NCBI RefSeq assembly: GCF_947568905.1
Contig: NC_079173.1
Location: 30,752,001 to 30,816,000 of the forward strand
Direction: 5' to 3'
From: Ostrea edulis
Lineage: Eukaryota
DNA: 64,000 bases
The notes beneath the pieces are model-generated. The model saw nothing but the letters and a program-made list of their open reading frames with translations, was not told the origin of the DNA and ran no database searches. Position 1 is the stretch's first letter. Every line of letters begins with the position of its first letter. Below, in pieces: positions 7,055-63,640 of the stretch. Made by a program: the position numbers and the translations under genes.

Positions 7055-7737
7055 AAGATTATAACGATCTAGTTCGTAAATACAACCTATCATTGCGTCA
7101 AATGCTGTCTGACGTGTTTCATACCGATTGTTAGGCCGTTCTTGGCACACTGATTTTGACTACGAATAACTCCGTTTACCTGATCAAGATATAGGACTAA
7201 CGGCGGGTGTGATATGCCGACAGGGGATACTTAATAATAATGATTGGTTTTATATAGCGCCTTATCCAGCGTATGCTGCTCAAAGCGCCTTACAATTATC
7301 AATGTACATTATTACTCCGGCAGACCTTATATCAATCTAGAACTTACTCCTCCTAGACACCTGATCCTACCTCTGGTGTGTCCAGGGGTCCGTGTTTGCC
7401 CGACTATCTATTTTGTATTGCTTATAGGAGTTATGAGATTGATCATTGTTCGTTATCTTCGCCTTTCATTCTACTTGAGAACAAAAAATTTCTAGCTGTT
7501 GCCTTCAACTTGACATTTAAGTATATACCTCTGGTGTGTTCAGGGGTCCTTGTTTGCCGAACTACCTATTTTGTATTACTTATGGGATTTATGAGATTTA
7601 TCACTGTTAGTTATCTTCACCTTTCACGATGTTTTATCTATAAACAATAATCATTTTCTTTTCATATGTCGATTCGATATGTCTCAGTGAACTCGAAATA
7701 AAGACACCATGTGTAGAGTTTCATATCTGCTTCGTCC
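7055..7737 (+). mobile_element. Naiad-type Penelope-like mosaic: 3' end, RT fragment and a second 3' end
   Basis: RT C-terminus YNDLVRKYNLSLRQMLSDVFHTDC*, then the 3' UTR ending ...gttatcttcgccttt. This is followed by RT codons LLENKKFLAVAFNLTFKYI | DVLSINNNH...YVDSICLSELEIK, split by a second 3'-end copy at about 7528-7625. Confidence 0.8.
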
Positions 7738-20819: not shown

Positions 20820-23800
20820 ATGGCATTAATTCCTCCAGGAAAGACGCCTATTAGCTTTCTTCAAGAAATCAGCACTAAAAGGGGGATAACTCCACAGTAT
20901 GATTTGCTGGCAAATGAGGGAGCTGTTCACGAACCTGTGTTTATCATGAGGGTTACTATTGGTGAAGTGATTGCCACGGGCAAAGGTGAGGCACATTGTA
21001 AATGATATATTGATATTTCATTGCTCCTAAGCCATGCATAATCATTATATCAATATATATGTGGATAATGATTATATGAATATATATGTGGAGGGTTACA
21101 TCAACATATATGTGGATAATGGTTATATCAATATATATGTGGATAATGGTTATATCAATATATATGTGAATAATCCACTTCCAGTGCTGTTTATTGATGA
21201 ACCTTTAGTTAGGCCACATAAAATTAATTCTCTGGTTCTATTTGGCCATAATTGATCAAGTTTTGTTAACGCTTTCAAAATGTACACTTGATATTCATTT
21301 GATTTACTTGCAAGTTCAGTCTGAAAGTGTCTTTCAGCAATGTGATTTAATATGTGTTTATATACAGTGATGTAATGAGCTGGTGTTTATATACAGTGAT
21401 GTAATGAGCTGGTGTTTATATACAGTGATGTAATGAGCTGGTGTTGATATACAGTGATGTAATGAGCTGGTGTTGATATACAGTGATGTAATGAGCTGGT
21501 GTTTATATACAGTGATGTAATGAGCTGGTGTTTATATACAGTGATGTAATGAGCTGGCGTTTATATACGGTGATGTAATGAGCTGGCGTTTATATACAGT
21601 GATGTAATGAGCTGGTGTTTATATACGGTGATGTAATGAGCTGGTGTTTATATACAGTGATGTAATGAGCTGGTGTTTATATACAGTGATGTAATGAGCT
21701 GGTGTTTATATACAGTGATGTAATGAGCTGGTGTTTATATACAGTGATGTAATGAGCCGCTGTGTCCCGGTATGTTGTAGGAACAAGCAAGAAGAAGGCA
21801 AAGCACGGAGCGGCACTGGCAGCTCTTCAGCAGATCCTGGGGCTGGGTGAAGGTCGAACCCCAGAACAACAACCTTCAGAACCTGGACAGTAAGTCAGTT
21901 AAACACGAAAGACACGGGTTCCATCACGTACAGTATAACTAATGAACAATATAGCATTGTTACAGTGAACAGGCTTATAAGGAATTAACAGCTATAATGA
22001 AGGGGTTTTCATTCCTCACATAGATAGAAATAACAATTATACAATTACAGACATTGAGGTATATTGCTTAGTCATGAATTGACATTTTCAATATTTTTGC
22101 CGTTCGCATATGAATGAAGGTTGATTACAGGGATTCTATGCAGATTATTGAAATGCATAACATCCATTTAAAATTTCCATTGTACGTATTCTGGGCATGT
22201 TCATGTAAGTATCGGTTATATGTGGTATGTGCTGGGTAGGATCGTCGACTATGTCATTACGTTGTGACGTTATGTATTGCTTATTATGGAGGAAAACAAA
22301 CTGTCCAAAAAAACCGACTTCAGCTGAGGAAATACACTAGATAAATTAAGGCAATTTTAGAATGAGAATAAACCGAGGTCTCTACACAATATCGTTATTG
22401 CTACCCAAATGCTATCAGTTAATCACATAAATATTGAAAGTAAATGAGGGTATGAATTGCAATGCTTCCCACCAGCATACATTTTTGGAAGCGTTAACAC
22501 ACATCCTGAAACATGCAGGCATGAAGCATTACAGTTCATACCCTCATATATTTTCATAAATTTCTTTCTTTATCATATACCTTCTGTTGCGATGAATTAC
22601 ATACTGTGACAAAAGTAACACAGTAGAGCAGGCTGTAAAGCAAGTCGCTGGGAACAAACAACTTTGATTCATTATGAATGTAATTCATTATATGCAATAA
22701 GTACAGGCTATATTTTAACTCTGCAGGGAATAAAAATCACTCTGCTGTAAGCATGAATTCGTTATAAATGAGTTTGCTGTAACCATGTTTTACTGTAAGT
22801 ACATGTCCCCCATTCCAGACCGTCCGGAAACATGATGGAAAGTGATGTTGCGGGTAATCCTGTCGGAGAGCTACAAGAATTTACACAAAAGAAACTCATT
22901 AAGCCGCCAATCTACGAGTTTGGCAATGAGGACGGTCCCCCTCACAACCGGGAGTTTATCTGTACAGTGAAGCTTGGGAAATTCACGGAGAAAGGCAGGT
23001 TTTTTGTGAGAGGGGAATGAAAAGTGAATTTGATATCTTTCCCAAGTGATAATTATGGAATTGTGAAGAATTTTCTTCTCTGACAAAGATATTGTGACAA
23101 GATTAAAGATACATATAAATATTTTGTGAAATATGCTGCTCCTGGAAGGGAGTTGTAATGGGCTTATTATGATAACTGTTGTTTTGACTCTCAAGCTTTA
23201 AAATGTCCTTTAAGATGTAATAAAACTCTTAAACAAATAATTGTATAAACATTGGATAAGGTTATCGAAGTTTCATCTTAAAACATTAATGAATTAAAGG
23301 ATCTGGAAGGTCGAAGAAGACAGCTAAACGATCTGCAGCGAGTGCTATGTTGGTCCACTTAAAGAACATTACACAGGACGGAGAAAACAACACTAAGATT
23401 GAAGACTCGGAGGAGGAAGATGAAATCCCACTGGTAAGTTTCACTGCTGCCTAATGTACGAATTTTATCATTTTTAATGACTTGATAGGAGCTGATGCAT
23501 AATTTGGCATAATCCTGATTTAGCATTTTCTATGTATGATGATGGATAAACAGAGATTTTCATTTTTAGTTCAATCATGAATTGGCACTCTCATTTCACA
23601 GCAATAGGTATTAAAATCGGAATGCTGCTGATTTAGGTACACATTTAATATTGCTATTATGGCTATGCAGGGCTCACACTGGACCAAAATTTTGTGTTGC
23701 AATCTGGCGTGTGCGCATCGACTCATACATGTTTACTGTAGATCTATATTTCATGTACAGTACACGACACGAGTTTTATGCGTGTTCCACGCAACGCGGT

Positions 23801-30409: not shown

Positions 30410-31222
30410 ATGAACTAGATATTCTCCACACTCAAACTAAATACCGGTATTCTCCACACCAGAACTAAATATTCTCTACACTCAGACTAAATATTCTCCA
30501 CACCGAAACTAAATATTCTCTTCACCAGAACTAAATATTCTCCACACCAAAACTAAATATTCTCTTCACCAGAACTAAATATTCTCCTCACCAGAACTAA
30601 ATATTCTCCACATTAGAACTAAATATACTCCACACCAAAACTAAATATTCTCTACACCCAAACTAAATATTCTCCACACCAAAACTAAATATTCTCACCC
30701 AAACTAAATAATCTCCACACCAGAACTAAATATTCTCCACACTCAAATTAAATATTTTTCACACCCAAACTAAATATTCTCTACACCAAAAGTAAATATT
30801 CTCCACACCAGAACTAAATATTCTCTACACCCAAACTAAATATTCTCTACACCCAAACTAAATATTCTCCACACCAGAACTAAATATTCTCCACACCAAA
30901 ACTAAATATTCTCCAAGCCAAAACTAAATATTCTCCAAACCAAAACTAAATATTCTCCAAGCCAAAACTAAATATTCTCCACACCAAAACTAAATAATCT
31001 CCACATCAAAACTAAATAATCTCACCAGAACTAAAATTCTCCACATCAGGACTAAATATTTTCCGCACCCAAACGAAAAATATTCTCTACACCAAAACTA
31101 AATATTCTCCACACCAGAACTAAATATTCTCCTCACCAGAACTAAATATTCTCCTCAGCAGAAATAAATATTCTCACCAGAACTAAATATTCTCACCAGA
31201 AATATTTTTCTCACCAGAACTA
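30410..31222. repeat. 22-bp minisatellite, about 37 copies
   Basis: Unit ccaaaactaaatattctccaca. Confidence 0.92.
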
Positions 31223-33202: not shown

Positions 33203-33363
33203 CGAGGTGTAAAAACAGTAGATAGGACCGCGGAAAAGCCATAAAATAGTTCTAAATTTAACAACGGGTTTAAGGAAATACACTGCGTCCAACCAAGTTG
33301 AAGACATGCATGAAACCGATATGGTCTCAATAAGTATTACATTTTTAACCCATGCATGAGATG

Positions 33364-35560
33364 TGAAGATAACGAACAGTGATCAATCTCATAACTCCTA
33401 TAAGGAATACAAATTGAGAGTTGAGCAAACACGGATCCCTGGACACACCAGATATAGGATCAGGTGCTTCAGAGGAGTAAGCATTCCCTGTCGACTGAGA
33501 CCTATATCTTGAGCAGGTAAACGGAGTAATCTGTAATCAAAATCAGTGTGCCAAAGACAGCCTAGCAAGTGGTAGGAAGCTAGTCATACACCATTTGAAC
33601 TAAAGGTAGGTTGTATTGGCAAAATAGGTCATTATAATGACCATAGAATTTGCGAAATGTTGGCTTTAAACGAGCTTGTTTGTCGTTAGCCTGCCTCGAT
33701 TTCAAAATTGATCATATGCACAAGCTCTTGTGTGTTGAAGCAGTTGAGAGATATAAACACCATATTCAGGTGATGACGGAATATTGCTATATAAATGTGG
33801 GAACTTGACGATGGAGAAGCTGAAATCATCCCGTTTGTCATTATACGCCCGTTTTTAGATGTGGCGTATTGTGTTTATTTGAAAATTATTGTTATATTGA
33901 GTGTACATAATTTGTCCGGCTAACTCCTCCCACAATTTTCAAGTGAGGATCATCTTGTTTTACAGAGTGTCTGTATGGATATTGAAGATGTGCATGTGGC
34001 AAGGATTTTGGTTTTCTTCAATTTTTGAGAAAATTATAGGTTGTTTAACTTGATCCCTTTTTGAGAAAATATTGCAAAGAGAGTACATGTACATGATTTG
34101 TTCAGTGAACTCCTCCCACAGTTTTCAAGACATAATCTTCCTTTACGGAGTGTTTATATAGGTATTAAAAATGTGCATGTGGCAAGGATGTTGATTTCCT
34201 TCAATTTTTAAGAAAATTACAGGTTGTTGAACTTGGTCAGTTTTGAGGAATATTGTATTGAGATTACATGATTTATCTTTTATTTTTCCTTCTACAGTTT
34301 TCAAGTGAGGACCTTCTTATTTTACAGAATATTTGTATGAGTATGGAAGATGTGCATGTGGCAAGGATTTTTGATGTTCTTAAATTTTTAAGAAAATTAC
34401 AGATTGTTGAACATAGTCTTTTTATAGGAAATATTCATATTATGCAAAGAAAGTATGTCACAGCCTGATGATGGCTGATTCTACCTGAAGCAAAGTTCTA
34501 CAAAATATGACTTAAGAAAAACACCCTATGTAAGCATTTTCACGGGCGTATTATGTACCGTTTGCGGTACTCTTGTTTATATTTCTTGTGGAAGTTTATA
34601 ATATGTATCTTTGTAATGATAATCTTTGATTAATCCTTATATATTGGAGAATAATGGACGCAGTATTGCTTTGATCTTTGCAATAACCCTGGTAGAATTG
34701 TCGTTATGTTCAGTGAAACATCCAAATATGTAATATATTGTAGAAGACTTTGGTATGTTCTTTTTTAGATCATCAGTATATGGTGATAATAGAGAAAGTC
34801 GATGTATTTTTTTTAACTTTCGAGTAGAAGGGCACAGGTCAGCTAAGAAAGGAGCACAATTTGTGGCATTAGGAATTCCAATAGATTTCTTTTAGACTAA
34901 ATAATAGATATTGTCAATGAGAAACTCCAGCATCTTTTTAACAATTTTAGTGTACTTGTGTCCAGAATCAGAATGGCGTTTTTCAAAGTAATTTTTAAAC
35001 GATTGATGATAAGATACTAGACATTTCCTTGTGCCATCTTTAATGGAAGCAGCAAATGATGTCGAAGAGGCTAGTCTTTAATTCATCATGAGGAATGGTG
35101 GTGTAAAGTATAAAAACAAAAAACAAAAAAAAAACACCATTCACTGGATACTGCAATGTATCTTCTGTTGTAAGGCTTTTTTGTGAAATTTGTTAATCCA
35201 GTATAGGTAAGGCAATTTCTCAAACTCATTCGTCCCATTCACTTGGATATAAAATGTGTTTAAAACTGAAACGAGATTTTGAAGAGTTTCATATTTTGAA
35301 AGAGAACTTGTTTACTAGATATGGAATTAAAGCTAAGCTCTTTTAAAATACAGTTGTAATAATGAGGTTTACAAACAAAGACAATGTTGTTACAAGCTTT
35401 GTCAGCTGGAACGAAAACATATTCCTCGTGTAACTTACATGTATTTAGCTCTTTCATCACTTCTGGTTTAATAAACACAGAAGGATAGATGGTATGCATG
35501 TTTGTTTTAATGTGTCTAATACAAGATTTAGATGTTCCTCAGATACTTGTTATAATATCC
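33364..35560 (-). mobile_element. Naiad-type Penelope-like element, 5'-truncated and degenerate, interrupted by a Helitron-like insert (33841-34540)
   Basis: 3' end gtgaagataacgaacagtgatcaatc at 33364; RT C-terminus to 33840. Further remnants: GIPNATNCAPFLADL near 34840, and IYPSVFIKPEVMKELN...LHEEYVFVPADKACNNIVFVCK at 35260-35499. Confidence 0.8.
33841..34540 (+). mobile_element. Non-autonomous Helitron-like element inserted into the Penelope-like element
   Basis: ttatacgcccg left end, repeated gatgtgcatgtggcaaggatt units, cacgggcgtattatgtaccgtttgcggtactcttgttt right end. Confidence 0.65.
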
Positions 35561-36034: not shown

Positions 36035-36517
36035 AGAGGCATGGACACGATTTGAGCTAAAAAATTTCAAATTTTATTTTTCCATTTTTATTGTTTACAA
36101 TGATTAACTAAAGTATTTCTAATGGTCAACCAAAATTTGAATATCAGTTGTTGAGTTACAAGCGAGATACAGCACCCACAATTCTTTGTTATGTAAACAA
36201 GGCTCGTGCCATGTTTTTGTTTACATATAGATGGTTTAATAGAAAATAGCATGTTTAAAACGAGATGTGCCAAACACTAGAAACTATTTAACTGTACGAA
36301 TGATACGAATACTATTATATTTACCTACGTAAACAAAACATTGCACAAGCCTTGTTTACATAACAAAGAATTGTGAGCTCTGTATCTCTCATGTACCTTG
36401 ACAACTGACATTCAAATTTTTGCCAACCATTAGAAATACCTTCGTTATGCTTTCTAAACATTAAAAATGGAAAAATAAAAAATTTTAATTTTCGGCTCAA
36501 ATCGTGTCCATGTCCCT
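36035..36517. mobile_element. Kolobok-like MITE
   Basis: ttaa|agaggcatggacacgatttgagc ... gctcaaatcgtgtccatgtccct|tcaa. Confidence 0.65.
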
Positions 36518-36748
36518 TCAAATGTATGATGGGCGACATCAATGATCACAAAATTCAGTCTTTATTCTGATGTTGAAAAATTGAAATATGGGCTTGTTTT
36601 AGCTTCTTCAAATACGTTTAAAGAAACAAAGTAAAGAATTGTGCGAATATGATGTAGACCTAATTGGTTGGGTTTTTTTTTTACGCAAGGTAAAGACGAG
36701 TCCGATGATACACACTGTGCACATATGTTCCAACATTGTAACTGTCAT

Positions 36749-37733
36749 GATAACGAACAGTGATCAATTTCATAACTCCTATTAAGGTGAAGATAACGAA
36801 CAGTGATCGATCTCATAACTCCTATAAAGGTGAAGATAACGAACAGTGATCAATCTCGTAACTCCTATAAAGGTGAAGATAACGAACAGTGATCGATCTC
36901 ATAACTCCTATAAAGGTGAAGATAACGAACAGTGATCGATCTCATAACTCCTATAAAGGTGAAGATAACGAACAGTGATCGATCTCATAACTCCTATAAA
37001 GGTGAAGATAACGAACAGTGATCGATCTCGTAACTCCTATAAAGGTGAAGATAACGAACAGTGATCGATCTCGTAACTCCTATAAAGGTGAAGATAACGA
37101 ACAGTGATCGATCTCCTAACTCCTATAAAGGTGAAGACAACGAACAGTGATCGATCTCGTAACTCCTATAAAGGTGAAGATAATGAACAGTGATCAATCT
37201 CGTAACTCCTATAAAAGTGAAGATAACGAACAGTGATCAATCTCGTAACTCCTATAAAGGTGAAGATAACGAACAGTGATCAATCTCGTAACTCCTATAA
37301 AGGTGAAGGTAACGAACAGTGATCAATCATATAACACCTATAAAGGTGAAGATAACGAACAGTGATCAATCTCGTAACTCCTATAAAGGTGAAGGTAACG
37401 AACAGTGATCAATCATATAACACCTATAAAGGTGAAGATAACGAACAGTGATCAATCTCGTAACTCCTATAAAGGTGAAGGTAACGAACAGTGATCAATC
37501 ATATAACACCTATAAAGGTGAAGATTACGAACAGTGATCAATCTCGTAACTCCTATAAGCAATACAAAATAGAGAGTTGGGCAAACACAGACTCCCTGGA
37601 TATACCAGAGGTGTAATCAGGTGCCTAAGACGAGTAAGCATCCCCTGTCGACCGGTCACACCCGCCGTGAGCCCTATATCCTGATCAGGTAAATGGAGTT
37701 ATCCGTAGTCAAAATCAGTGTGCCAAGAACATG
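36749..37733 (-). mobile_element. Naiad-type Penelope-like 3' end carrying about 19 tandem copies of its terminal 43 nt
   Basis: 43-bp unit aaggtgaagataacgaacagtgatcgatctcataactcctata at 36749-37558, continuing without a break into the same family's 3' UTR at 37559-37733. Confidence 0.88.
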
Positions 37734-38028
37734 CTTGAGATGCAGATAAAAGAGGAGATGCAGATAAAAGAGGCGATACAGACACAGATAAAAAGTAATT
37801 CACTTTTCTACCAAATTTAATAGGACTTGGTATGTTGACAATGTATGAATTTTATACATTGTATGATATAGTTCTACAGAAAAATGCATTTCATCATTTG
37901 AAGAGAAATTCTATTTCAGAGAGCAGTTAAGTATATTGCCCTTAAATGCATTGAGGATATCATGGCTTGATTCTCAAATAAACTCCTTAATGTTAGATAG
38001 AATTTTAAATGGAATGAAAAAACAACAT

Positions 38029-42003: not shown

Positions 42004-43875
42004 AGACCGGTGAAGCCTTCAAATTTATGCCTATGCTCGGCGTTTATGGCTATTGAGCAGTGAGGGTTCTTAAGCGTGCCACACCTACTGTGACATATAA
42101 TCACAATATCAAAACATCATAATTAAAAATATGAACACTAACATTAAATAAACAAATCATGCACGTTGAAAGTGACATTTTGCATCGAAAGATCTGTATC
42201 CGTGATGTAACCCATGTTTTATTCGCAAGTAACTTATTTTGGTGAGTGTATACTTATTTACGGTGGGCAGCTGTACAATGGAAACCCTTATTGTGAATTA
42301 TTTATCCCAAATCTCTCATTATTTTATCAGTATAACATTTAGGAAATACATGTAATTACATTTGTACATTCTTATGTGTTAGCTGCGGCTGTTGATGCTA
42401 ATTTAGCGATTATTAAACTGATTTAGCGATTACTAAGCTGATTTAGTGGTTACTAAGCTGATTTGGCGGTTACTAAGCTGATTTAGCGGTTACTAAACTG
42501 ATTTAGCGATTACTAAGCTGATTTAGCGGTTACTAAGCTGATTTAGCGGTTACTAAGCTGATTTAGTGATTACTAAGCTGATTTAGCGGTTACTAAGCTG
42601 ATTTAGCGGTTACTAAGCTAATGTAGCGGTTACTAAGCTGCTATCTATTTTAAATGTCGGCTCCGCTAAAGCGTCGTCGGTAACTTAGCATTAACTTCCG
42701 CAAATAACGAATGAGGAGAAAGTTATCGCCATTCTTTCGTATTTTGTCTTCGTGTCACAGGATTCGATCGCCATATTATGACGAATACAGAAACTATTTC
42801 GGAATCTTAATGCTGACTTAATGGTCGCGGAAACGTCAAGTTGTTAGCCAATCAAAATACAGTACACGCACAAGTTTCGGCATTAGAATAGTAGATACGC
42901 TTACTCTGAACGAAATCTCCAGATTTTCTCCTCCCCAGATATCCATACCTTGGTCATATGTTCCCATCTTTGTGAAGTAGTCTCGGTTTATTGAGAACAA
43001 GCCACCAGCTATTGTAGGTGTTCTTTAATTAGAAAAGCCCCAACAGTTAGTATTTACAATTTTAAAATATAAATTTATGAAAAATTAAAGATAACGAACA
43101 GTGATCAATCTCATAACTCCTATAAGCAATACAAAATAGAGCGTTGGGCAAACACGGACCTCTGGATGTACCAGAGGTGGGATTAGGTCCATAGGAGGAA
43201 TAAACATCCCCTGTCGACCGGTCACACCAGTTGTGATTCCTACATCTTGACCAGTTAAACGGAGTAATTATTAGCTAAAATTGGTATGTAAAGAATGGCC
43301 TAACCATTGACCTATGCAACACACTAGACAGCATTTTACATAATGGTAGTTTGTGTTGGCAAATTAGATCATAATATCTACCATAGAATCTGAGAAATGC
43401 TGATGTTAAACGAGACTGTTGAAGATCGTGTGACATCAACTTATTTAAAAACTGATCATATTCAGAACATGTAAAGATAGGGGTAGAAAATTTACTGGAT
43501 CCAGCAACATATCTCTTGTTTGTAAGGGGGTCTATGAAGTTTTGGAATCCAGCACAGGTAACTCATAACCATTGGTTGGATTGGTTGGTTCCACTCGAGA
43601 ATATTTCATTCATATGGAGATATCACCATTGCCGGTGAATGGCTGGAAAATTTAGGCCTATGCTCGGCCCTTACGACCTTTGAGCAGGATCGGGGGATCT
43701 TTCTCGTGCCACACCTGCTGTAACACGGGGTATCTGTTTTTGCGGTCTCATCCGAAGGACCGCGCCATTTAGTTACCTCTTACGACAAGCAAGGGGTACT
43801 GAGGACCTATTCTAACCCGGATCTCCACGGAAAGATTGGATTGGATTGTATTTTGTTTAACGTCTCTCTCTCTCA

Positions 43876-47529: not shown

Positions 47530-48510
47530 AAAAATGCAATATTTAGATTAAGATTGGACCTCTGGTCACACCCAAGGTGGGAAGTGTCCAAGAGGAGTAA
47601 GCATCCATTATTGACCGGTCGCAACAGCAGTGAGTCCTACCAGGTAAACGCAGTAATCCGTAGTCAAAATCAGTAAAGAGAGGCCTAACAATTGGCATGA
47701 AACATGTCAGACGGCATTCGATCTAATGACAGATTGTATTTGGAATATCATATCATTATAATTACCATAGAATTTGCAGAATGTTGATTTAAACGAAATT
47801 GTTGAATCCCCCTGAAACACCAACTTATTTGTCAGTAGCCTATCTGCATTTTAAGATTGATCATACGCAGAACAAACTCTCGCGAATCAAATCAGTTGAG
47901 ACATAAACGCAATCTGCAGGTGATGATGGAATATTGCTACATAAATATGGAAAATTTACTACGATGGAGAAGCTGAAGTCGGGACTTGTGCGTAAAATCG
48001 GGGGGGGGGGGGGGGGTTGTAACAAATATTTTTTTTTAGATCAAAAGATATTAATATTTCTTATACACCAGGGTCCCTTTCCAAAGACGAATTTCTTGAA
48101 AATCACGATTCATTTTTCAACACATTTGATATCCCAGTCTATGAATGTGACTTACCGTGCCTTTGCTGGATTCTACTGGATTTCCAAATTCACAAAAATC
48201 CTTACAGTTATACATGTACATATTAAACGAACTTACCAAAATGCAGGGTAATGATAAACCTCACAAAGACAATGTTGTCAACTGGAATCAATACGTATTC
48301 CTCATCTAATCTAATTCTTACCTCCTTTTAATAAACACAGAAGGTACGCACTTTTGTGTTAATGTGTTTAATACGAGATTTCAGTGTTCCTCTTATACTA
48401 TTTATCCATTCTGACAAGTTGTGCAGTGAAAAGGTGAAGATAAAGAACAGCGATCAATCTCGTAATTCCCACAAAGAATACAAAATTAAGAGTAGGGCAA
48501 ACACGGCCCC
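47530..48510. mobile_element. Naiad-type Penelope-like mosaic with an inverted internal segment
   Basis: Minus-strand 3' part at 47530-47995. Plus-strand YTPGSLSKDEFLENH...DLPCLCWI at 48062-48207. Minus-strand SEWINSIRGTLKSRIKH...EEYVLIPVD at 48250-48415. Minus-strand terminus at 48428-48510. Confidence 0.72.
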
Positions 48511-48663
48511 CTTGACTCACCAGACGTCAACAGAGTTTTTTACAGAGATGAAGTTCTGTCGCGAATTGAAAGATATGGGGCTCTCTCAAATTGGGACCTT
48601 TTAAAATAAATGGTTTTAAGACGTCATTTTCAATTGCATGTAAATCGACATCACTAGGTGAGA

Positions 48664-49035
48664 CATGGCTGTCATGTGTCCGTGGATATCGTACTACTGT
48701 AGAGTTACACATGTCTGTCATGTGACCGTGGATATCGTGCTACTGTAGAATTACATGTGTCTGTCACGTGACCGTGGATATCGTGCTACCGTAAACTTAC
48801 ACATCTCTGTCACGTGACCGTGGATATCGTGCTATTGTAGAGTTATACATGTCTGTCACGTGACCGTGGATATCATGCTACTGTAAACTTACACATGTCT
48901 GTCACGTGACCGTGGATATCGTGCTATTGTAGAGTTATACATGTCTGTCACGTGACCGTGGATATCATGCTACTGTAGAGTTACACATGTCTGTCACGTG
49001 ACCGTAGATATCGTGTTATACTATAGAGTTACACA
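48664..49035. repeat. 46-bp minisatellite, about 8 copies
   Basis: Unit catgtctgtcacgtgaccgtggatatcgtgctactgtagagttaca. Confidence 0.92.
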
Positions 49036-51627: not shown

Positions 51628-52330
51628 ATTTACTATGGGTAGAGGCCCAGGCGTGTTAACTATGGGTAGAGGCCCAGACGTCTTAACTATGGGTAGATAC
51701 CCAGACATGTTAATTATGGGTAGAGACCCAGGCATGTTAACTATGAGTAGAGGCCCAGGCGTGTTAACTATGCGTAGAGGCCCAGACGTCTTAACTATGG
51801 GTAGAGGCCCAGGCGTCTTAACTATGGGTAGAGGCCCAGGCGTCTTAACTATGGGTAGAGGCCCAGACGTCTTAACTATGGGTAGAGGCCCAGGCGTGTT
51901 AACTATGGGTAGAGGCTCAGACGTGTTAACTATGGATAGAGACACAGACGTGTTAACTATGGGTAGAGACCCAGACGTGTTAACTATGGGTAGAGATCCA
52001 GACATGTTAACTATGGGTAGAGATCCAGACGTGTTAACTATGGGTAGAGACTCAGACGTGTTAACTATGGGTAGAGATCCAGACGTGTTAACTATGGATA
52101 GAGGCCCAGACATGTTAACTATGGGTAGAGACCCAGACGTGTTAACTATGGGTAGAGACCCAGACGTGTTAACTATGGGTAGAGGCCCAGACATGTTAAC
52201 TATGGGTAGAGGCCCAGGCGTGTTAACTATGGGTAGAGGCCCAGGCGTGTTAACTATGGGTAGAGACCCAGACGTGTTAACTATGGGTAGAGACCCAGGC
52301 GTGCTAACAATAGGTAGACCTAGGCGTGTT
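51628..52330. repeat. 27-bp minisatellite, about 26 copies
   Basis: Unit ttaactatgggtagaggcccaggcgtg and variants. Confidence 0.95.
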
Positions 52331-54203: not shown

Positions 54204-54319
54204 AGGATGTTATGATATCTGATATTCGAAACAAAGAGAAACAATACGTACACGTGGAAACTTTTAGAATGGTGTAGGAGCTTGGATACCTCGTGTACTG
54301 CTGCTTTTTCCTACGATAG

Positions 54320-54630
54320 GTGAAGATAACAAACAGTGATCAATCTCAGAACTCCCACAAGGAATACGAAATTAAAAGTTGTCAAACACGGACCCCTAGA
54401 CATACCAGAGGTGGGATCGGGTACCTAGGAGGAGTAAGCATCCCCTGTCGACCGGTCAAACCCGCCTTGAGCCCTATGTCTTGATCAGTTAAACGGAGTA
54501 ATCCGTAGTCAAAATCAGAGTGCCAAGAGCGGCCTAACAATCGGTATGAAACACGTCAGACAGCTTTTGACCCAATGATAGGTCATATGGGCAAACTAGA
54601 TCATTATAAAGACAACAGAATTTGCGAATT
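54320..54630 (-). mobile_element. Naiad-type Penelope-like 3' fragment
   Basis: ggtgaagataacaaacagtgatcaatctc...gagtaagcatcccctgtcgaccggtc...gaaacacgtcagacagc matches the other copies. Confidence 0.8.
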
Positions 54631-62210: not shown

Positions 62211-63640
62211 ATACCAGATTCTGATAATAAACCCATAGTCTTCACCGTGACTTTACTAGATTTTGATACTAAACCCATTGACTTCACCATGACTTTACTA
62301 GATTATGATAATAAACCCATTGACTTCACCATGACTTTACTAGATTCTTATAATAAACCCATTGACTTCACTGTGACTTTACCAGATTCTGATAATAAAT
62401 CCATTGACTTCACCGTGACTTTACCAGATTCTGATAATAAACCCATTGACTTCACCATGACTTTACCAGATTCTGATAATAAAACCATTGACTTCACCAG
62501 ATTCTGATAATAAAACCATTGACTTCACCATGACTTTACTATATTCTGATAATAAAACCATTGACTTCACCAGATTCTGATGATAAACCCATTGACTTCA
62601 CCATGACTTTACCAGATTCTGATAATAAACCCATTGACTTCACCGTGACTTTACCAGAATCTGATAATAGACTCATTGACTTCACCATGACTTTTCCAGA
62701 TTCTGATAATAAACCCATTGACTTCACCATGACTTTACCAGATTCTGATGATAAACTCATTGACTTCACCAGGTTCTGATACTAAACCCATTGACTTCAC
62801 CATGACTTTACCAGATTCTGATAATAAACCCATTGACTTCACCCGTGACATTCACATATGATGCCGAGCGTTTGACGATGGAACTATCACTACCTGTTTT
62901 AACGACTTAGGTGTGTCGCGGCCGGGATTCGAATCCCGGGCCTTCCGCATGACTTCACCATGACTTTACCAGATTCTGATATTAAACTCATTGACTTCAC
63001 CATGACTTTACTAGATTCTGATAATAAAACCATTGACTTCACCATGACTTTACCAGATTCTGATAATAAACCCATTGACTTCACCATGACTTTACCAGAT
63101 TCTGATAATAAACCCATTGACTTCACCATGACTTTACCAGATTCTGATAATAAACCCATTGACTTCACCATGACTTTACCAGATTCTGATAATAAACTCA
63201 TTGACTTCACCATGAATTTACTATATTCTGATAATAAACCCATTGACTTCACCATGACTTTACCAGATTCTGATAATAAACCCATTGACTTCACCATGAC
63301 TTTACTAGATTCTGATAATAAAACCATTGACTTCACCATGACTTTACTATATTCTGATAATAAACCTATTGACTTCACCATGACTTTACCAGATTCTGAT
63401 AATAAACCCATTGACTTCACCATGGCTTTACCAGGTTCTGATAATAAACCCATTGACTTCACCATGGCTTTACCAGGTTCTGATAATAAACCCATTGACT
63501 TCACCATGACTTTACTATATTCTGATAATAAAACCATTGACTTCACCAGATTCTGATGATAAACCCATTGACTTCACCATGACTTTACTAGATTCTGATA
63601 CTAAACCCATTGACTTCACCGTTACTTTACCAGGTTCTGA
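62211..63640. repeat. 42-bp minisatellite, about 30 copies, interrupted by a SINE fragment
   Basis: Unit atgactttaccagattctgataataaacccattgacttcacc. Confidence 0.95.
62841..62950 (-). mobile_element. SINE family A 5' fragment embedded in the 42-bp array
   Basis: cccgtgacattcacatatgatgccgagcg...gccgggattcgaatcccgggccttccgcatg matches 44033-44142. Confidence 0.75.

What the first reader, a model, noticed from the sequence alone, without database searches (positions are those of the whole stretch)
36749..37733. Penelope-like element ends in about 19 tandem copies of exactly its last 43 nt: possible telomerase-like reiterative reverse transcription
Seen: on the element strand (minus) the 3' UTR runs into tataggagttacgagattgatcactgttcgttatcttcacctt repeated about 19 times. 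Other copies in the window (about 7466, 7624, 33364, 48428, 54320) end at or within a few nt of ...cttcacctt. The unit is therefore the element's terminal segment, and the junction has only 1-2 nt of microhomology. Known: PLE RTs are the closest retroelement relatives of telomerase RT, and TPRT starts at the RNA 3' end. Inference: repeated copying of the RNA 3' end (realignment or template jumping) before read-through would produce this layout. An alternating A/B variant pattern at about 37260-37530 shows that at least part of the array expanded later by DNA-level slippage or unequal exchange.
Basis: partly seen in the sequence, partly recalled or inferred. Interest (0 to 1): 0.72.

Follow-up and report, generated by a model that had tools for sequence, protein, structure and literature searches.

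The report
Penelope-like element's fixed-register terminal minisatellite
A 43-base piece next to the 3' end of a very abundant oyster Penelope-like retrotransposon is repeated 19 times here and, in exactly the same register, at about 1,450 other places; the extra copies grew by ordinary DNA slippage, but the fixed starting point suggests that the element's own copying machinery makes the first duplication.

Summary
The array is real: window 36749-37558, minus strand, 43 nt x 18.8. It follows 171 nt of 3' UTR of a 5'-truncated Naiad-type Penelope-like element (PLE). Full-length copies encode 1025 aa, with GIY-YIG at the N-terminus and RT at the C-terminus.

One correction. The unit is sub-terminal, not the last 43 nt. 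Intact copies carry 4 more nt, (T/G)CAT, after the last unit, and these are never repeated.

The unit-unit junction occurs 9,714 times in the genome. 1,454 of about 33,000 3' ends (4.4%) have two or more units, always after the UTR and in one register. Only about 6 loci hold arrays in other registers across the UTR/unit boundary.

The 19 copies here are not fossils of reverse transcription:
- Units 2/4/6 and 3/5/7 alternate as an 86-nt higher-order repeat.
- Eight distal units share one substitution.
- Private substitutions run at 0.65% against 4.1% in the adjoining UTR.
- Paralogous loci hold 10 vs 6 and 16 vs 5 units.
- Shared unit variants are private to each locus.

Best reading: a rare seeding duplication specific to the element, then ordinary DNA-level minisatellite growth. 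RT re-alignment over 43 nt with 1-2 nt of homology is the most likely seed, but it is unproven. Inheritance from array-bearing templates is not excluded.

The parts
36749..37557 (-). Array of 19 units of 43 nt. Unit 1 is 37557-37515. Unit 19 is 36783-36749 and is cut after 35 nt.
   Evidence: TRF, pattern search, unit table.
37300..37514 (-). Higher-order repeat. Units 2-6, continued by unit 7, alternate B, A, B, A, B with a period of 86 nt. B differs from A at 5 positions.
   Evidence: units 2, 4 and 6 are identical, and units 3, 5 and 7 are identical.
36784..37170 (-). Distal block, units 10-18. Eight of these nine units share the substitution T18C. Four of them (units 14-16 and 18) also share C12T. 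Unit 17 matches the array consensus.
   Evidence: Among the sampled arrays, T18C is shared by several units only in this one (one unit of L036 also has it).
37558..37733 (-). 5'-truncated remnant of the element's 3' UTR. About 171 nt align to the family UTR, with 7 differences. No coding part is left.
   Evidence: Alignment A1, distance to the UTR majority sequence, extent against the full-length copy.
36741..36748 (-). 3' junction: ...CGTTATC|AT then unique flank. The canonical end ...CTTCACCTT-TCAT is missing 10 nt.
   Evidence: The same junction lies in contigs of 4 runs covering 36489-36776 with 0 differences.
7423..7469 (+). Single-unit 3' end of another copy, ending in TCAT.
7581..7627 (+). 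Single-unit 3' end of a very short copy (about 54 nt upstream of the unit), ending in TCAC.
33356..33402 (-). Single-unit 3' end of a copy that reaches into the ORF, ending in TCAT.
43078..43124 (-). Single-unit 3' end of an older copy.
48427..48473 (-). Single-unit 3' end of a non-autonomous relative. It shares only the last ~90 nt with the PLE.
54313..54359 (-). Single-unit 3' end of a divergent sub-lineage copy.

Best explanation
The window holds an old, heavily 5'-truncated copy of a Naiad-type Penelope-like retrotransposon of an oyster genome. Its conserved sub-terminal 43-nt module has become a minisatellite. I propose two steps.

Step 1 is seeding, and it is inferred. In a few percent of copies the module is duplicated once, in a fixed register: CACCTT joined to TATAGG, with the last 4 nt (T/G)CAT left out. 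The register is the same at about 1,450 loci and in several sub-lineages, while other registers are about 300 times rarer. The duplication is therefore made by something specific to the element. Most likely the RT starts at ...CAT, copies the 43-nt module, then re-aligns its cDNA end 43 nt back using 1-2 nt of homology and copies the module again before reading on into the UTR.

Step 2 is growth, and it is shown. Once two units exist, ordinary DNA-level slippage and unequal exchange expand, contract and homogenise the array locally. The 19 units seen here are almost all products of this second step.
For: Identity of the element:
- Full-length copies have one ORF of 1025 aa with GIY-YIG at residues 156-245 and RT at about 764-875. 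The CxC, GxKY and DKA motifs are present.
- There is no hammerhead ribozyme.
- Partial tandems and inverted stubs occur.

Fixed register, genome-wide:
- The junction 25-mer gives 9,714 hits against 0 in the control.
- 1,454 arrays stand against 31,499 single-unit ends.
- Seven of the eight independently flanked arrays read start directly after ...TTGTATTGCT (the eighth keeps only GCT). Four end in a whole unit plus TCA, two in a whole unit plus other letters, and two inside a unit.
- Arrays end in GCAT as well as TCAT (44 exact GCAT ends). They also occur in a divergent sub-lineage and in a non-autonomous relative.
- Arrays in other registers that span the UTR/unit boundary occur at only about 6 loci.
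- There is no direct repeat beyond 1-2 nt at the unit boundaries, and no notable DNA or RNA structure.
- Arrays are about 2.5 times enriched in the TCAT type, which offers one more base of homology (my estimate).

Growth at the DNA level:
- The window array has a higher-order repeat and variant blocks. It has 5 private substitutions in 774 nt (0.65%), against 4.1% in the UTR.
- The larger arrays show the same deficit (0.4-1.6% against 4-9% in the UTR); the small arrays L060 (5 units) and L046 (10 units) do not.
- Paralog pairs with 97.7% and 95% identical flanks hold 10 vs 6 and 16 vs 5 units.
- Shared variants are private to each locus, and 70% of nearest-neighbour units lie in the same array.
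- Array sizes paired from coordinates run from 2 to 20 units. The first step is rare (4.4%) and later steps are common.
Against: - No direct evidence ties the first duplication to reverse transcription. A by-eye estimate (about 5.7% between the two units) fits either duplication at insertion or later.
- Arrays are more frequent in the older TCAT lineage (about 5.4%) than in the young GCAT lineage (about 2.3%). A process acting after insertion would give the same pattern.
- In L036 the first and fifteenth units share two substitutions that the units between them lack. This hints that an array with two unit types existed early, as an inherited array would.
- Re-alignment lands 4 nt inside the start site with only 1-2 nt of pairing.
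- Arrays at the internal pLTR/5'-end junction were seen at 2 of about 138 junctions. That number is too small to say whether they are depleted.
Confidence: 0.5

Rival explanations
1. Processive telomerase-like reiteration. The RT laid down the whole array of about 19 units at insertion by repeated re-copying of the RNA end. Only a minor part was added later at the DNA level.
For: The register is fixed at about 1,450 loci. Once repeated, arrays are usually long: 60-80% of arrays have three or more units. PLE RTs are the sister group of TERT (PMC8557442).
Against: - If all 18 full units dated from the insertion, about 27 private substitutions would be expected from the UTR divergence. Five are seen.
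- Variant blocks and the A/B higher-order repeat cannot come from one RNA template.
- Paralogs differ by 4 and 11 units.
- The same deficit of private changes appears in the other large arrays.
Confidence: 0.08
2. Inheritance. The duplication arose once or a few times. Array-bearing copies, including dead copies transcribed by read-through and mobilised in trans, then served as RNA templates, so the arrays and their register spread by retro-copying.
For: Non-autonomous relatives share the 3' module, so trans-mobilisation is plausible. L036 suggests an early array with two unit types. Several loci on contig C1 show the same 602-nt span between their first and last exact junctions.
Against: - Arrays occur in TCAT and GCAT lineages, in a divergent sub-lineage and in a non-autonomous relative, so at least four separate seedings in the same register are still needed.
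- None of the ~6 other-register arrays has spread.
- Independent arrays share no internal variants.
- Only 2 of about 138 pLTR/5'-end junctions carry an array.
Confidence: 0.2
3. Pure DNA-level minisatellite. Both the first duplication and the growth come from replication slippage or unequal exchange at a sequence-specific hotspot, with no role for the element's enzymes.
For: The genome is very rich in minisatellites: 52 TRF rows in 64 kb. Growth is clearly at the DNA level. Arrays are commoner in older copies.
Against: One register at 1,454 loci stands against about 6 loci for all other registers across the boundary. The boundaries share only 1-2 nt, and no hairpin or other structure marks them.
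Confidence: 0.12
4. Endonuclease-driven duplication of resident copies. The element's RNP binds the module in an existing copy. Its GIY-YIG nuclease nicks the two strands at the two unit boundaries, and fill-in without insertion leaves a 43-bp duplication, like a target-site duplication.
For: A PLE protein cuts both strands and can act on its own pLTR, and the Penelope nuclease needs the terminal 'tail' sequence for recognition (PMC11167929). This reading would explain a fixed register and a frequency that rises with the age of the copy.
Against: There is no shared motif at the two boundaries and no direct evidence. Nothing comparable has been described for any PLE.
Confidence: 0.1

Closest known systems
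Naiad clade of Penelope-like elements (Craig et al. 2021, PMC8557442)
   Same: A single ORF with N-terminal GIY-YIG and C-terminal RT. CxC and DKA motifs. No hammerhead ribozyme. Strong 5' truncation. Partial tandems (pLTR) and inverted stubs. Tens of thousands of copies in a mollusc genome.
   Different: No fixed-register array of a sub-terminal module is described for Naiads. The paper mentions only that tandem repeats lengthen some Chlamys families and that a 30-40 bp 'tail' occurs at one end of insertions.
The PLE 'tail' between two internal RT start sites (Frangieh et al. 2024, PMC11167929)
   Same: A discrete terminal segment of 30-40 nt whose borders are set by where the RT starts. The RT starts inside a longer RNA without homology to the target.
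   Different: Here the 43-nt module is not optional. Copies ending at its 5' border are at most about 1% and are heterogeneous. The tail is not reported to form arrays.
3' tail repeats of LINEs made by RT slippage at initiation (stringent-type LINEs such as eel UnaL2, CR1, I factor; from my own knowledge)
   Same: Tandem repeats at the extreme 3' end of a retroelement that integrates by target-primed reverse transcription. Their number varies among copies and is attributed to RT re-alignment.
   Different: Those units are 3-8 nt long and present in essentially every copy. Here the unit is 43 nt, repeated in 4.4% of copies, and 4 unrepeated nt follow it.
Telomerase repeat addition, and DRT2-type concatemer synthesis (PMC12039810)
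   Same: An RT re-copies a bounded internal template to give head-to-tail repeats in one register.
   Different: Telomerase has a dedicated alignment region and template boundary element. DRT2 brings the template ends together with an RNA stem. No such stem or alignment region was found here, and the present arrays are mostly DNA-level products.
Transposon-derived minisatellites and satellites (VNTRs inside transposable elements)
   Same: Higher-order repeats, variant blocks, locus-specific homogenisation and unit-number differences between paralogs.
   Different: Ordinary transposon-derived minisatellites arise in arbitrary registers at single loci. This one recurs in one register at about 1,450 loci.

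Membership tests
Naiad-type Penelope-like element | One ORF with N-terminal GIY-YIG endonuclease and C-terminal reverse transcriptase (permuted order) | tested here: met
   L076:3434-6511 encodes 1025 aa. GIY-YIG lies at 156-245 (E 2e-4) and RVT_1 at 764-875 (E 5e-4). Both score just under Pfam's own cut-offs. The nearest Atlas clusters are mollusc proteins of about 1000 aa with GIY-YIG and RVT_1.
Naiad-type Penelope-like element | CxC linker motif, GxKF/Y motif, and DKA in place of DKG | tested here: met
   Read in the translation...PPTCSCSS......LKGPKYREP......VPADKASNN...; motif list from PMC8557442.
Naiad-type Penelope-like element | No canonical hammerhead ribozyme in the pLTR | tested here: met
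   No Rfam family reaches its gathering score in two full-length loci.
Naiad-type Penelope-like element | Frequent 5' truncation, partial tandems (pLTR), adjacent inverted copies | tested here: met
   The median 5' extent of incidental copies is about 100 nt. L077 has a 135-nt partial copy abutting a full-length copy. L076 has an inverted unit before the 5' end and an inverted stub after the 3' end.
Naiad-type Penelope-like element | Placement of the RT inside the Naiad clade in a phylogeny | not tested
Telomerase-like reiterative reverse transcription | All repeats copied from one template, so identical at birth and equally old | tested here: not met
   The window array has variant blocks, a higher-order repeat, and 0.65% private changes against 4.1% in the UTR. 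This holds for the present array. It says nothing about a possible first duplication.
Telomerase-like reiterative reverse transcription | Fixed template boundaries, that is, the same register wherever it acts | tested here: met
   One junction occurs 9,714 times. There are 1,454 arrays, against about 6 loci in other registers.
Telomerase-like reiterative reverse transcription | An alignment region that pairs the product end with the template for the next round | tested here: inconclusive
   Only 1 nt (GCAT type) or 2 nt (TCAT type) of homology is available. Arrays are about 2.5 times commoner in the TCAT type.
Telomerase-like reiterative reverse transcription | Repeat addition shown with the enzyme | not testable with these tools
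   Needs recombinant protein and the RNA of the 3' module.
Ordinary DNA-level minisatellite (VNTR) | Head-to-tail units of 10-100 bp with locus-specific variants, higher-order repeats and changing unit number | tested here: met
Ordinary DNA-level minisatellite (VNTR) | Origin by chance slippage, so register and period differ among independent loci | tested here: not met
   The same register and period occur at about 1,450 loci in at least 4 sub-lineages.
PLE 'tail' (optional 30-40 nt terminal extension) | A sizeable share of copies ends at the inner border, without the segment | tested here: not met
   At most 348 copies (41 exact) lack the unit after ...TTGTATTGCT. Many of these are internal deletions or variants. 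This compares with about 33,000 copies that have it.

The most novel reading that the evidence does not exclude
The reverse transcriptase of an endonuclease-bearing Penelope-like element has an intrinsic template boundary 43 nt upstream of its start site. In a few percent of integrations it translocates back and re-copies that bounded template. This would be a telomerase-like repeat-addition step retained in a transposing relative of TERT. The roughly 1,450 fixed-register arrays would be its genomic traces, later enlarged by DNA slippage.
Probability: 0.3. Interest if true: 0.85.

Novelty: new variant of a known kind. Interest (0 to 1): 0.55.

Why it matters
How Penelope-like elements integrate is still largely unknown, and they are the closest transposing relatives of telomerase.

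A family with about 33,000 readable 3' ends, where one bounded 43-nt segment is re-duplicated in a single register about 300 times more often than any neighbouring register, gives a concrete prediction to test. The prediction is that the RT, or the RNP as a whole, recognises both borders of this module.

If the seeding is RT-made, it would be a natural record of template re-alignment by a PLE RT. It would also point to a route by which a retroelement seeds dispersed minisatellites across a genome.

If it is not RT-made, the case still shows how one transposon module can account for about 1,450 minisatellite loci in a bivalve genome. That matters for repeat annotation and for marker design.

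Tried and rejected
1. The unit as the PLE 'tail' between two RT start sites. Copies ending at the unit's 5' border are at most about 1% and heterogeneous. Rejected as a general feature. One inverted stub in L076 does stop near that border.

2. Arrays at internal pLTR/5'-end junctions as a test of RT against DNA seeding. 136 junctions have a single unit, and 5 hits at 2 loci have an array. The numbers are too small to decide.

3. RNA or DNA structure that would bring the unit's borders together or stall a polymerase. The strong hairpins in L076 come from adjacent inverted copies, not from the element's own 3' end. Three array units fold no better than shuffles, z = -1.1. The alignment of 14 diverse 3' modules gives no supported consensus structure.

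4. A link between arrays and extreme 5' truncation. Array copies extend 0-251 nt upstream of the unit, and incidental single copies have the same median of about 100 nt. No link.

5. Are array units younger than the host copy? The unit/UTR divergence ratio is about 0.5 in arrays and about 0.8 in single copies. Suggestive, but not significant with 7 arrays.

6. Dating two-unit copies by eye from the printed matches. I estimate about 5.7% between the two units. This fits both duplication at insertion and later duplication, depending on calibration. Inconclusive.

7. Target-site duplication around the window copy. None found.

8. Reads. All four runs laid are short-read contigs. They confirm both junctions but cannot span the array, so they say nothing on unit-number polymorphism.

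With 2 mismatches allowed, the prefix GCT also matches CTT inside arrays, so the totals are inflated. I used only the rows with 0-1 mismatch.

After one search matched letters were no longer shown, so a full survey of arrays was not possible.

For the distance estimates I used only a 172-nt majority sequence of the non-coding UTR and the 43-nt unit. I built no full-length consensus of the element.

Full report
**What is in the window**

Tandem Repeats Finder reports one array at 36749-37558, period 43, 18.8 copies, 93% matches. An exact copy is window:37429-37471:-. Fifteen units match it within 3 mismatches, where chance gives none.

Upstream on the element strand, at 37558-37733, lie about 171 nt that align to the 3' UTR of a repeated element. 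There is no coding sequence.

Six further copies of the same 3' end lie in the window, at 7465, 7623, 33360, 43082, 48431 and 54317. Each has one unit.

Contigs of four public runs from four studies contain both flank junctions of the array-bearing copy without a single difference, at 36489-36776 and 37705-38000. The insertion and its ends are therefore real and shared among individuals. The contigs cannot cross the array.

**What the element is**

The RT-like end of the ORF recurs about 80,000 times in a first look at the 895-Mb genome. Earlier notes of this scan call it an oyster genome.

Full-length copies, such as L076:3434-6511, encode 1025 aa. A GIY-YIG domain lies at residues 156-245 and a reverse transcriptase at about 764-875. 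Both Pfam matches fall just under the curated cut-offs. The translation shows the CxC, GxKY and DKA motifs that Craig et al. give as diagnostic for Naiads (PMC8557442). The nearest protein-atlas clusters are mollusc proteins of about 1000 aa with GIY-YIG and RVT_1.

No Rfam family, and so no hammerhead ribozyme, is found. Partial tandems, inverted stubs and strong 5' truncation are present. I did not make a phylogeny. On architecture and motifs this is a Naiad-type Penelope-like element.

**Correction to the observation**

The unit is not the very end of the element. In 28 of 29 other loci fetched with the UTR, a single unit is followed by TCAT or GCAT (occasionally a one-letter variant) and then by unrelated flank. 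Genome-wide, 31,499 copies read UTR, one unit, (T/G)CAT.

The T or G goes with diagnostic UTR variants. It is GCAT with the young lineage and TCAT with an older one. These letters are therefore encoded by the element and are not target sequence. In full-length partial tandems, unit + GCAT abuts the 5' end of the next copy.

In arrays the 4 nt occur once, after the last unit. The repeated segment is thus the 43 nt just inside the last 4 nt.

The window's own array ends ...CGTTATC|AT. A 10-nt deletion between two TC dinucleotides of the canonical end would give this. That step is inference.

None of these holds.
- The 25-nt unit-unit junction occurs 9,714 times, and the reversed control gives 0.
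- UTR + unit + start of a second unit occurs 1,454 times, against 31,499 single-unit ends. That is 4.4%.
- I read eleven arrays with eight independent flank pairs. Seven start directly after ...TTGTATTGCT and the eighth keeps only GCT. Four end in a whole unit followed by TCA, two in a whole unit followed by other letters, and two inside a unit.
- Arrays end in GCAT as well as TCAT (44 exact GCAT ends). They also occur in a divergent sub-lineage (L055) and in a non-autonomous relative that shares only the last ~90 nt (L045/L046).
- As a control for register, I searched for any tandem duplication of period 24-54 that spans the UTR/unit boundary. It occurs at about 6 loci, 5 of them independent.

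The canonical register is therefore roughly 300 times commoner than all neighbouring registers together. Yet its borders share only 1-2 nt and show no special DNA or RNA structure. Random slippage cannot explain where the repeat begins.

**The 19 copies are not RT fossils**

In the window, units 2, 4 and 6 are identical to each other and differ from units 3, 5 and 7 at five positions. This is an 86-nt higher-order repeat. Units 10-16 and 18 share T18C, and units 14-16 and 18 also share C12T.

Only 5 substitutions are private to one of the 18 full units. That is 0.65% of 774 nt. The adjoining UTR differs from its lineage's majority sequence at 4.1%. In single-unit copies the unit diverges about 0.8 times as fast as the UTR. 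Units as old as the insertion should therefore carry about 27 private changes.

The larger arrays show the same deficit: 0.4-1.6% private changes against 4-9% in the UTR. The small arrays L060 (5 units) and L046 (10 units) do not show it.

Two pairs of paralogous loci, with flanks 97.7% and 95% identical, hold 10 vs 6 and 16 vs 5 units. Variants shared by several units are almost always private to one locus, and 70% of nearest-neighbour units lie in the same array. Growth and turnover are thus ordinary DNA-level minisatellite dynamics.

**Size distribution**

I paired start and end coordinates. This gives arrays of 2, 2, 2, 2, 2, 2, 2, 2, 3, 3, 3, 3, 4, 6, 6, 7, 8, 13, 14, 15 and 20 units. The arrays I read directly have 3-19 units.

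Among exact matches, two-unit copies number 32 and copies with three or more units exceed 100. The first step is therefore rare (4.4%) and further steps are common. A rare seeding event followed by easy, homology-driven expansion would give this. A rarely entered but processive RT mode would give it too.

**What seeds the array**

Three facts favour a process tied to the element:
- There is one register.
- It recurs in at least four sub-lineages.
- Arrays are 2.5 times commoner in the TCAT type, which offers 2 nt of homology for re-alignment rather than 1 (my estimate).

The simplest such process is one re-alignment of the nascent cDNA by the RT. It starts at ...CAT, copies the 43-nt module, then jumps back 43 nt and copies it again before continuing into the UTR. 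Known PLE biochemistry makes this plausible but does not show it. A Poseidon-clade protein starts reverse transcription at defined internal sites of a longer RNA, without homology to the target (PMC11167929).

I tested whether the unit is the optional 'tail' of that work. It is not, because copies lacking it are at most about 1%.

**Rivals that remain**

- Inheritance from array-bearing templates. L036 has an early-looking two-type pattern, and three C1 loci show equal spans. However, at least four seedings are still needed, no other-register array has spread, and independent arrays share no internal variants.
- A hidden DNA-level hotspot, for which I found no basis.
- Nicking of resident copies at both unit borders by the element's nuclease, followed by fill-in. 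This fits the higher frequency in older copies: about 5.4% in the TCAT lineage at 7.2% UTR divergence, against about 2.3% in the GCAT lineage at 1.8%.

The test I consider decisive is to date the two-unit copies against their own UTRs. My by-eye estimate from printed matches is inconclusive.

**Verdict**

The family-wide fixed register is a genuine, unusual and apparently undescribed property of this Naiad family. No paper in the library holds a 21-nt core of the unit, and none links PLEs with such arrays. However, the telomerase-like step is at most a single seeding duplication, and it remains an inference. The array in this window is mostly an ordinary minisatellite.

Noticed in passing
L076:3330-3416 (G000 C2, about 67.861 Mb): Directly before the 5' end of a full-length copy, an inverted copy of 32 nt of the unit, an 11-nt spacer and a forward unit form a near-perfect hairpin. 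Folded as RNA it gives -73.6 kcal/mol, z = -8.6. This replaces the usual partial tandem.
   Followed up: partly
L076:6686-6760: After the 3' end (unit + GCAT) of the same full-length copy comes an inverted stub of the UTR. It stops near the unit's 5' border, so the unit sits in the loop of a long hairpin. This is the only sign of a 'tail at one end only' arrangement that I saw.
   Followed up: partly
window 48427-49035: A non-autonomous element shares only the last ~90 nt (conserved block plus unit) with the PLE. Immediately upstream of it lies a separate 46-nt x 8 minisatellite at 48663-49035.
   Followed up: no
window 7340-7630: Two 3' ends of the family lie 158 nt apart on the plus strand. 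The first copy has an insertion of about 115 nt inside its UTR (alignment A1, columns 503-615).
   Followed up: no
G000 C3 40.52-41.11 Mb, and C1 25.69-26.01 Mb: The same two-unit copy recurs 13 times at spacings of 45-68 kb on C3. A similar series lies on C1 at about 49-kb steps. These look like large tandem segmental duplications. They inflate locus counts slightly.
   Followed up: no
G000 C1:46482162-46482712: Four hits 122 nt apart of unit + GCAT + element 5' end. This is a tandem array with a different, longer period built across the pLTR/5'-end junction.
   Followed up: no
L062:2210-3572 (G000 C4, about 87.318 Mb): Next to a PLE copy lie ORF pieces with DUF3504, Phage_integrase and QRICH1-like matches. 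They look like a Crypton-type tyrosine-recombinase element.
   Followed up: no
window, whole: The window is very rich in minisatellites, with 52 TRF rows. Examples: 42 nt x 35 at 62212-63640, 22 nt x 34 at 30448-31194, 27 nt x 25 at 51632-52318, and 29 nt x 14 at 21354-21757. I did not examine whether any is the terminal module of another retroelement.
   Followed up: no
window 37737-37782: An 18-nt x 2.6 repeat lies in the flank directly upstream of the truncated copy's 5' junction.
   Followed up: no
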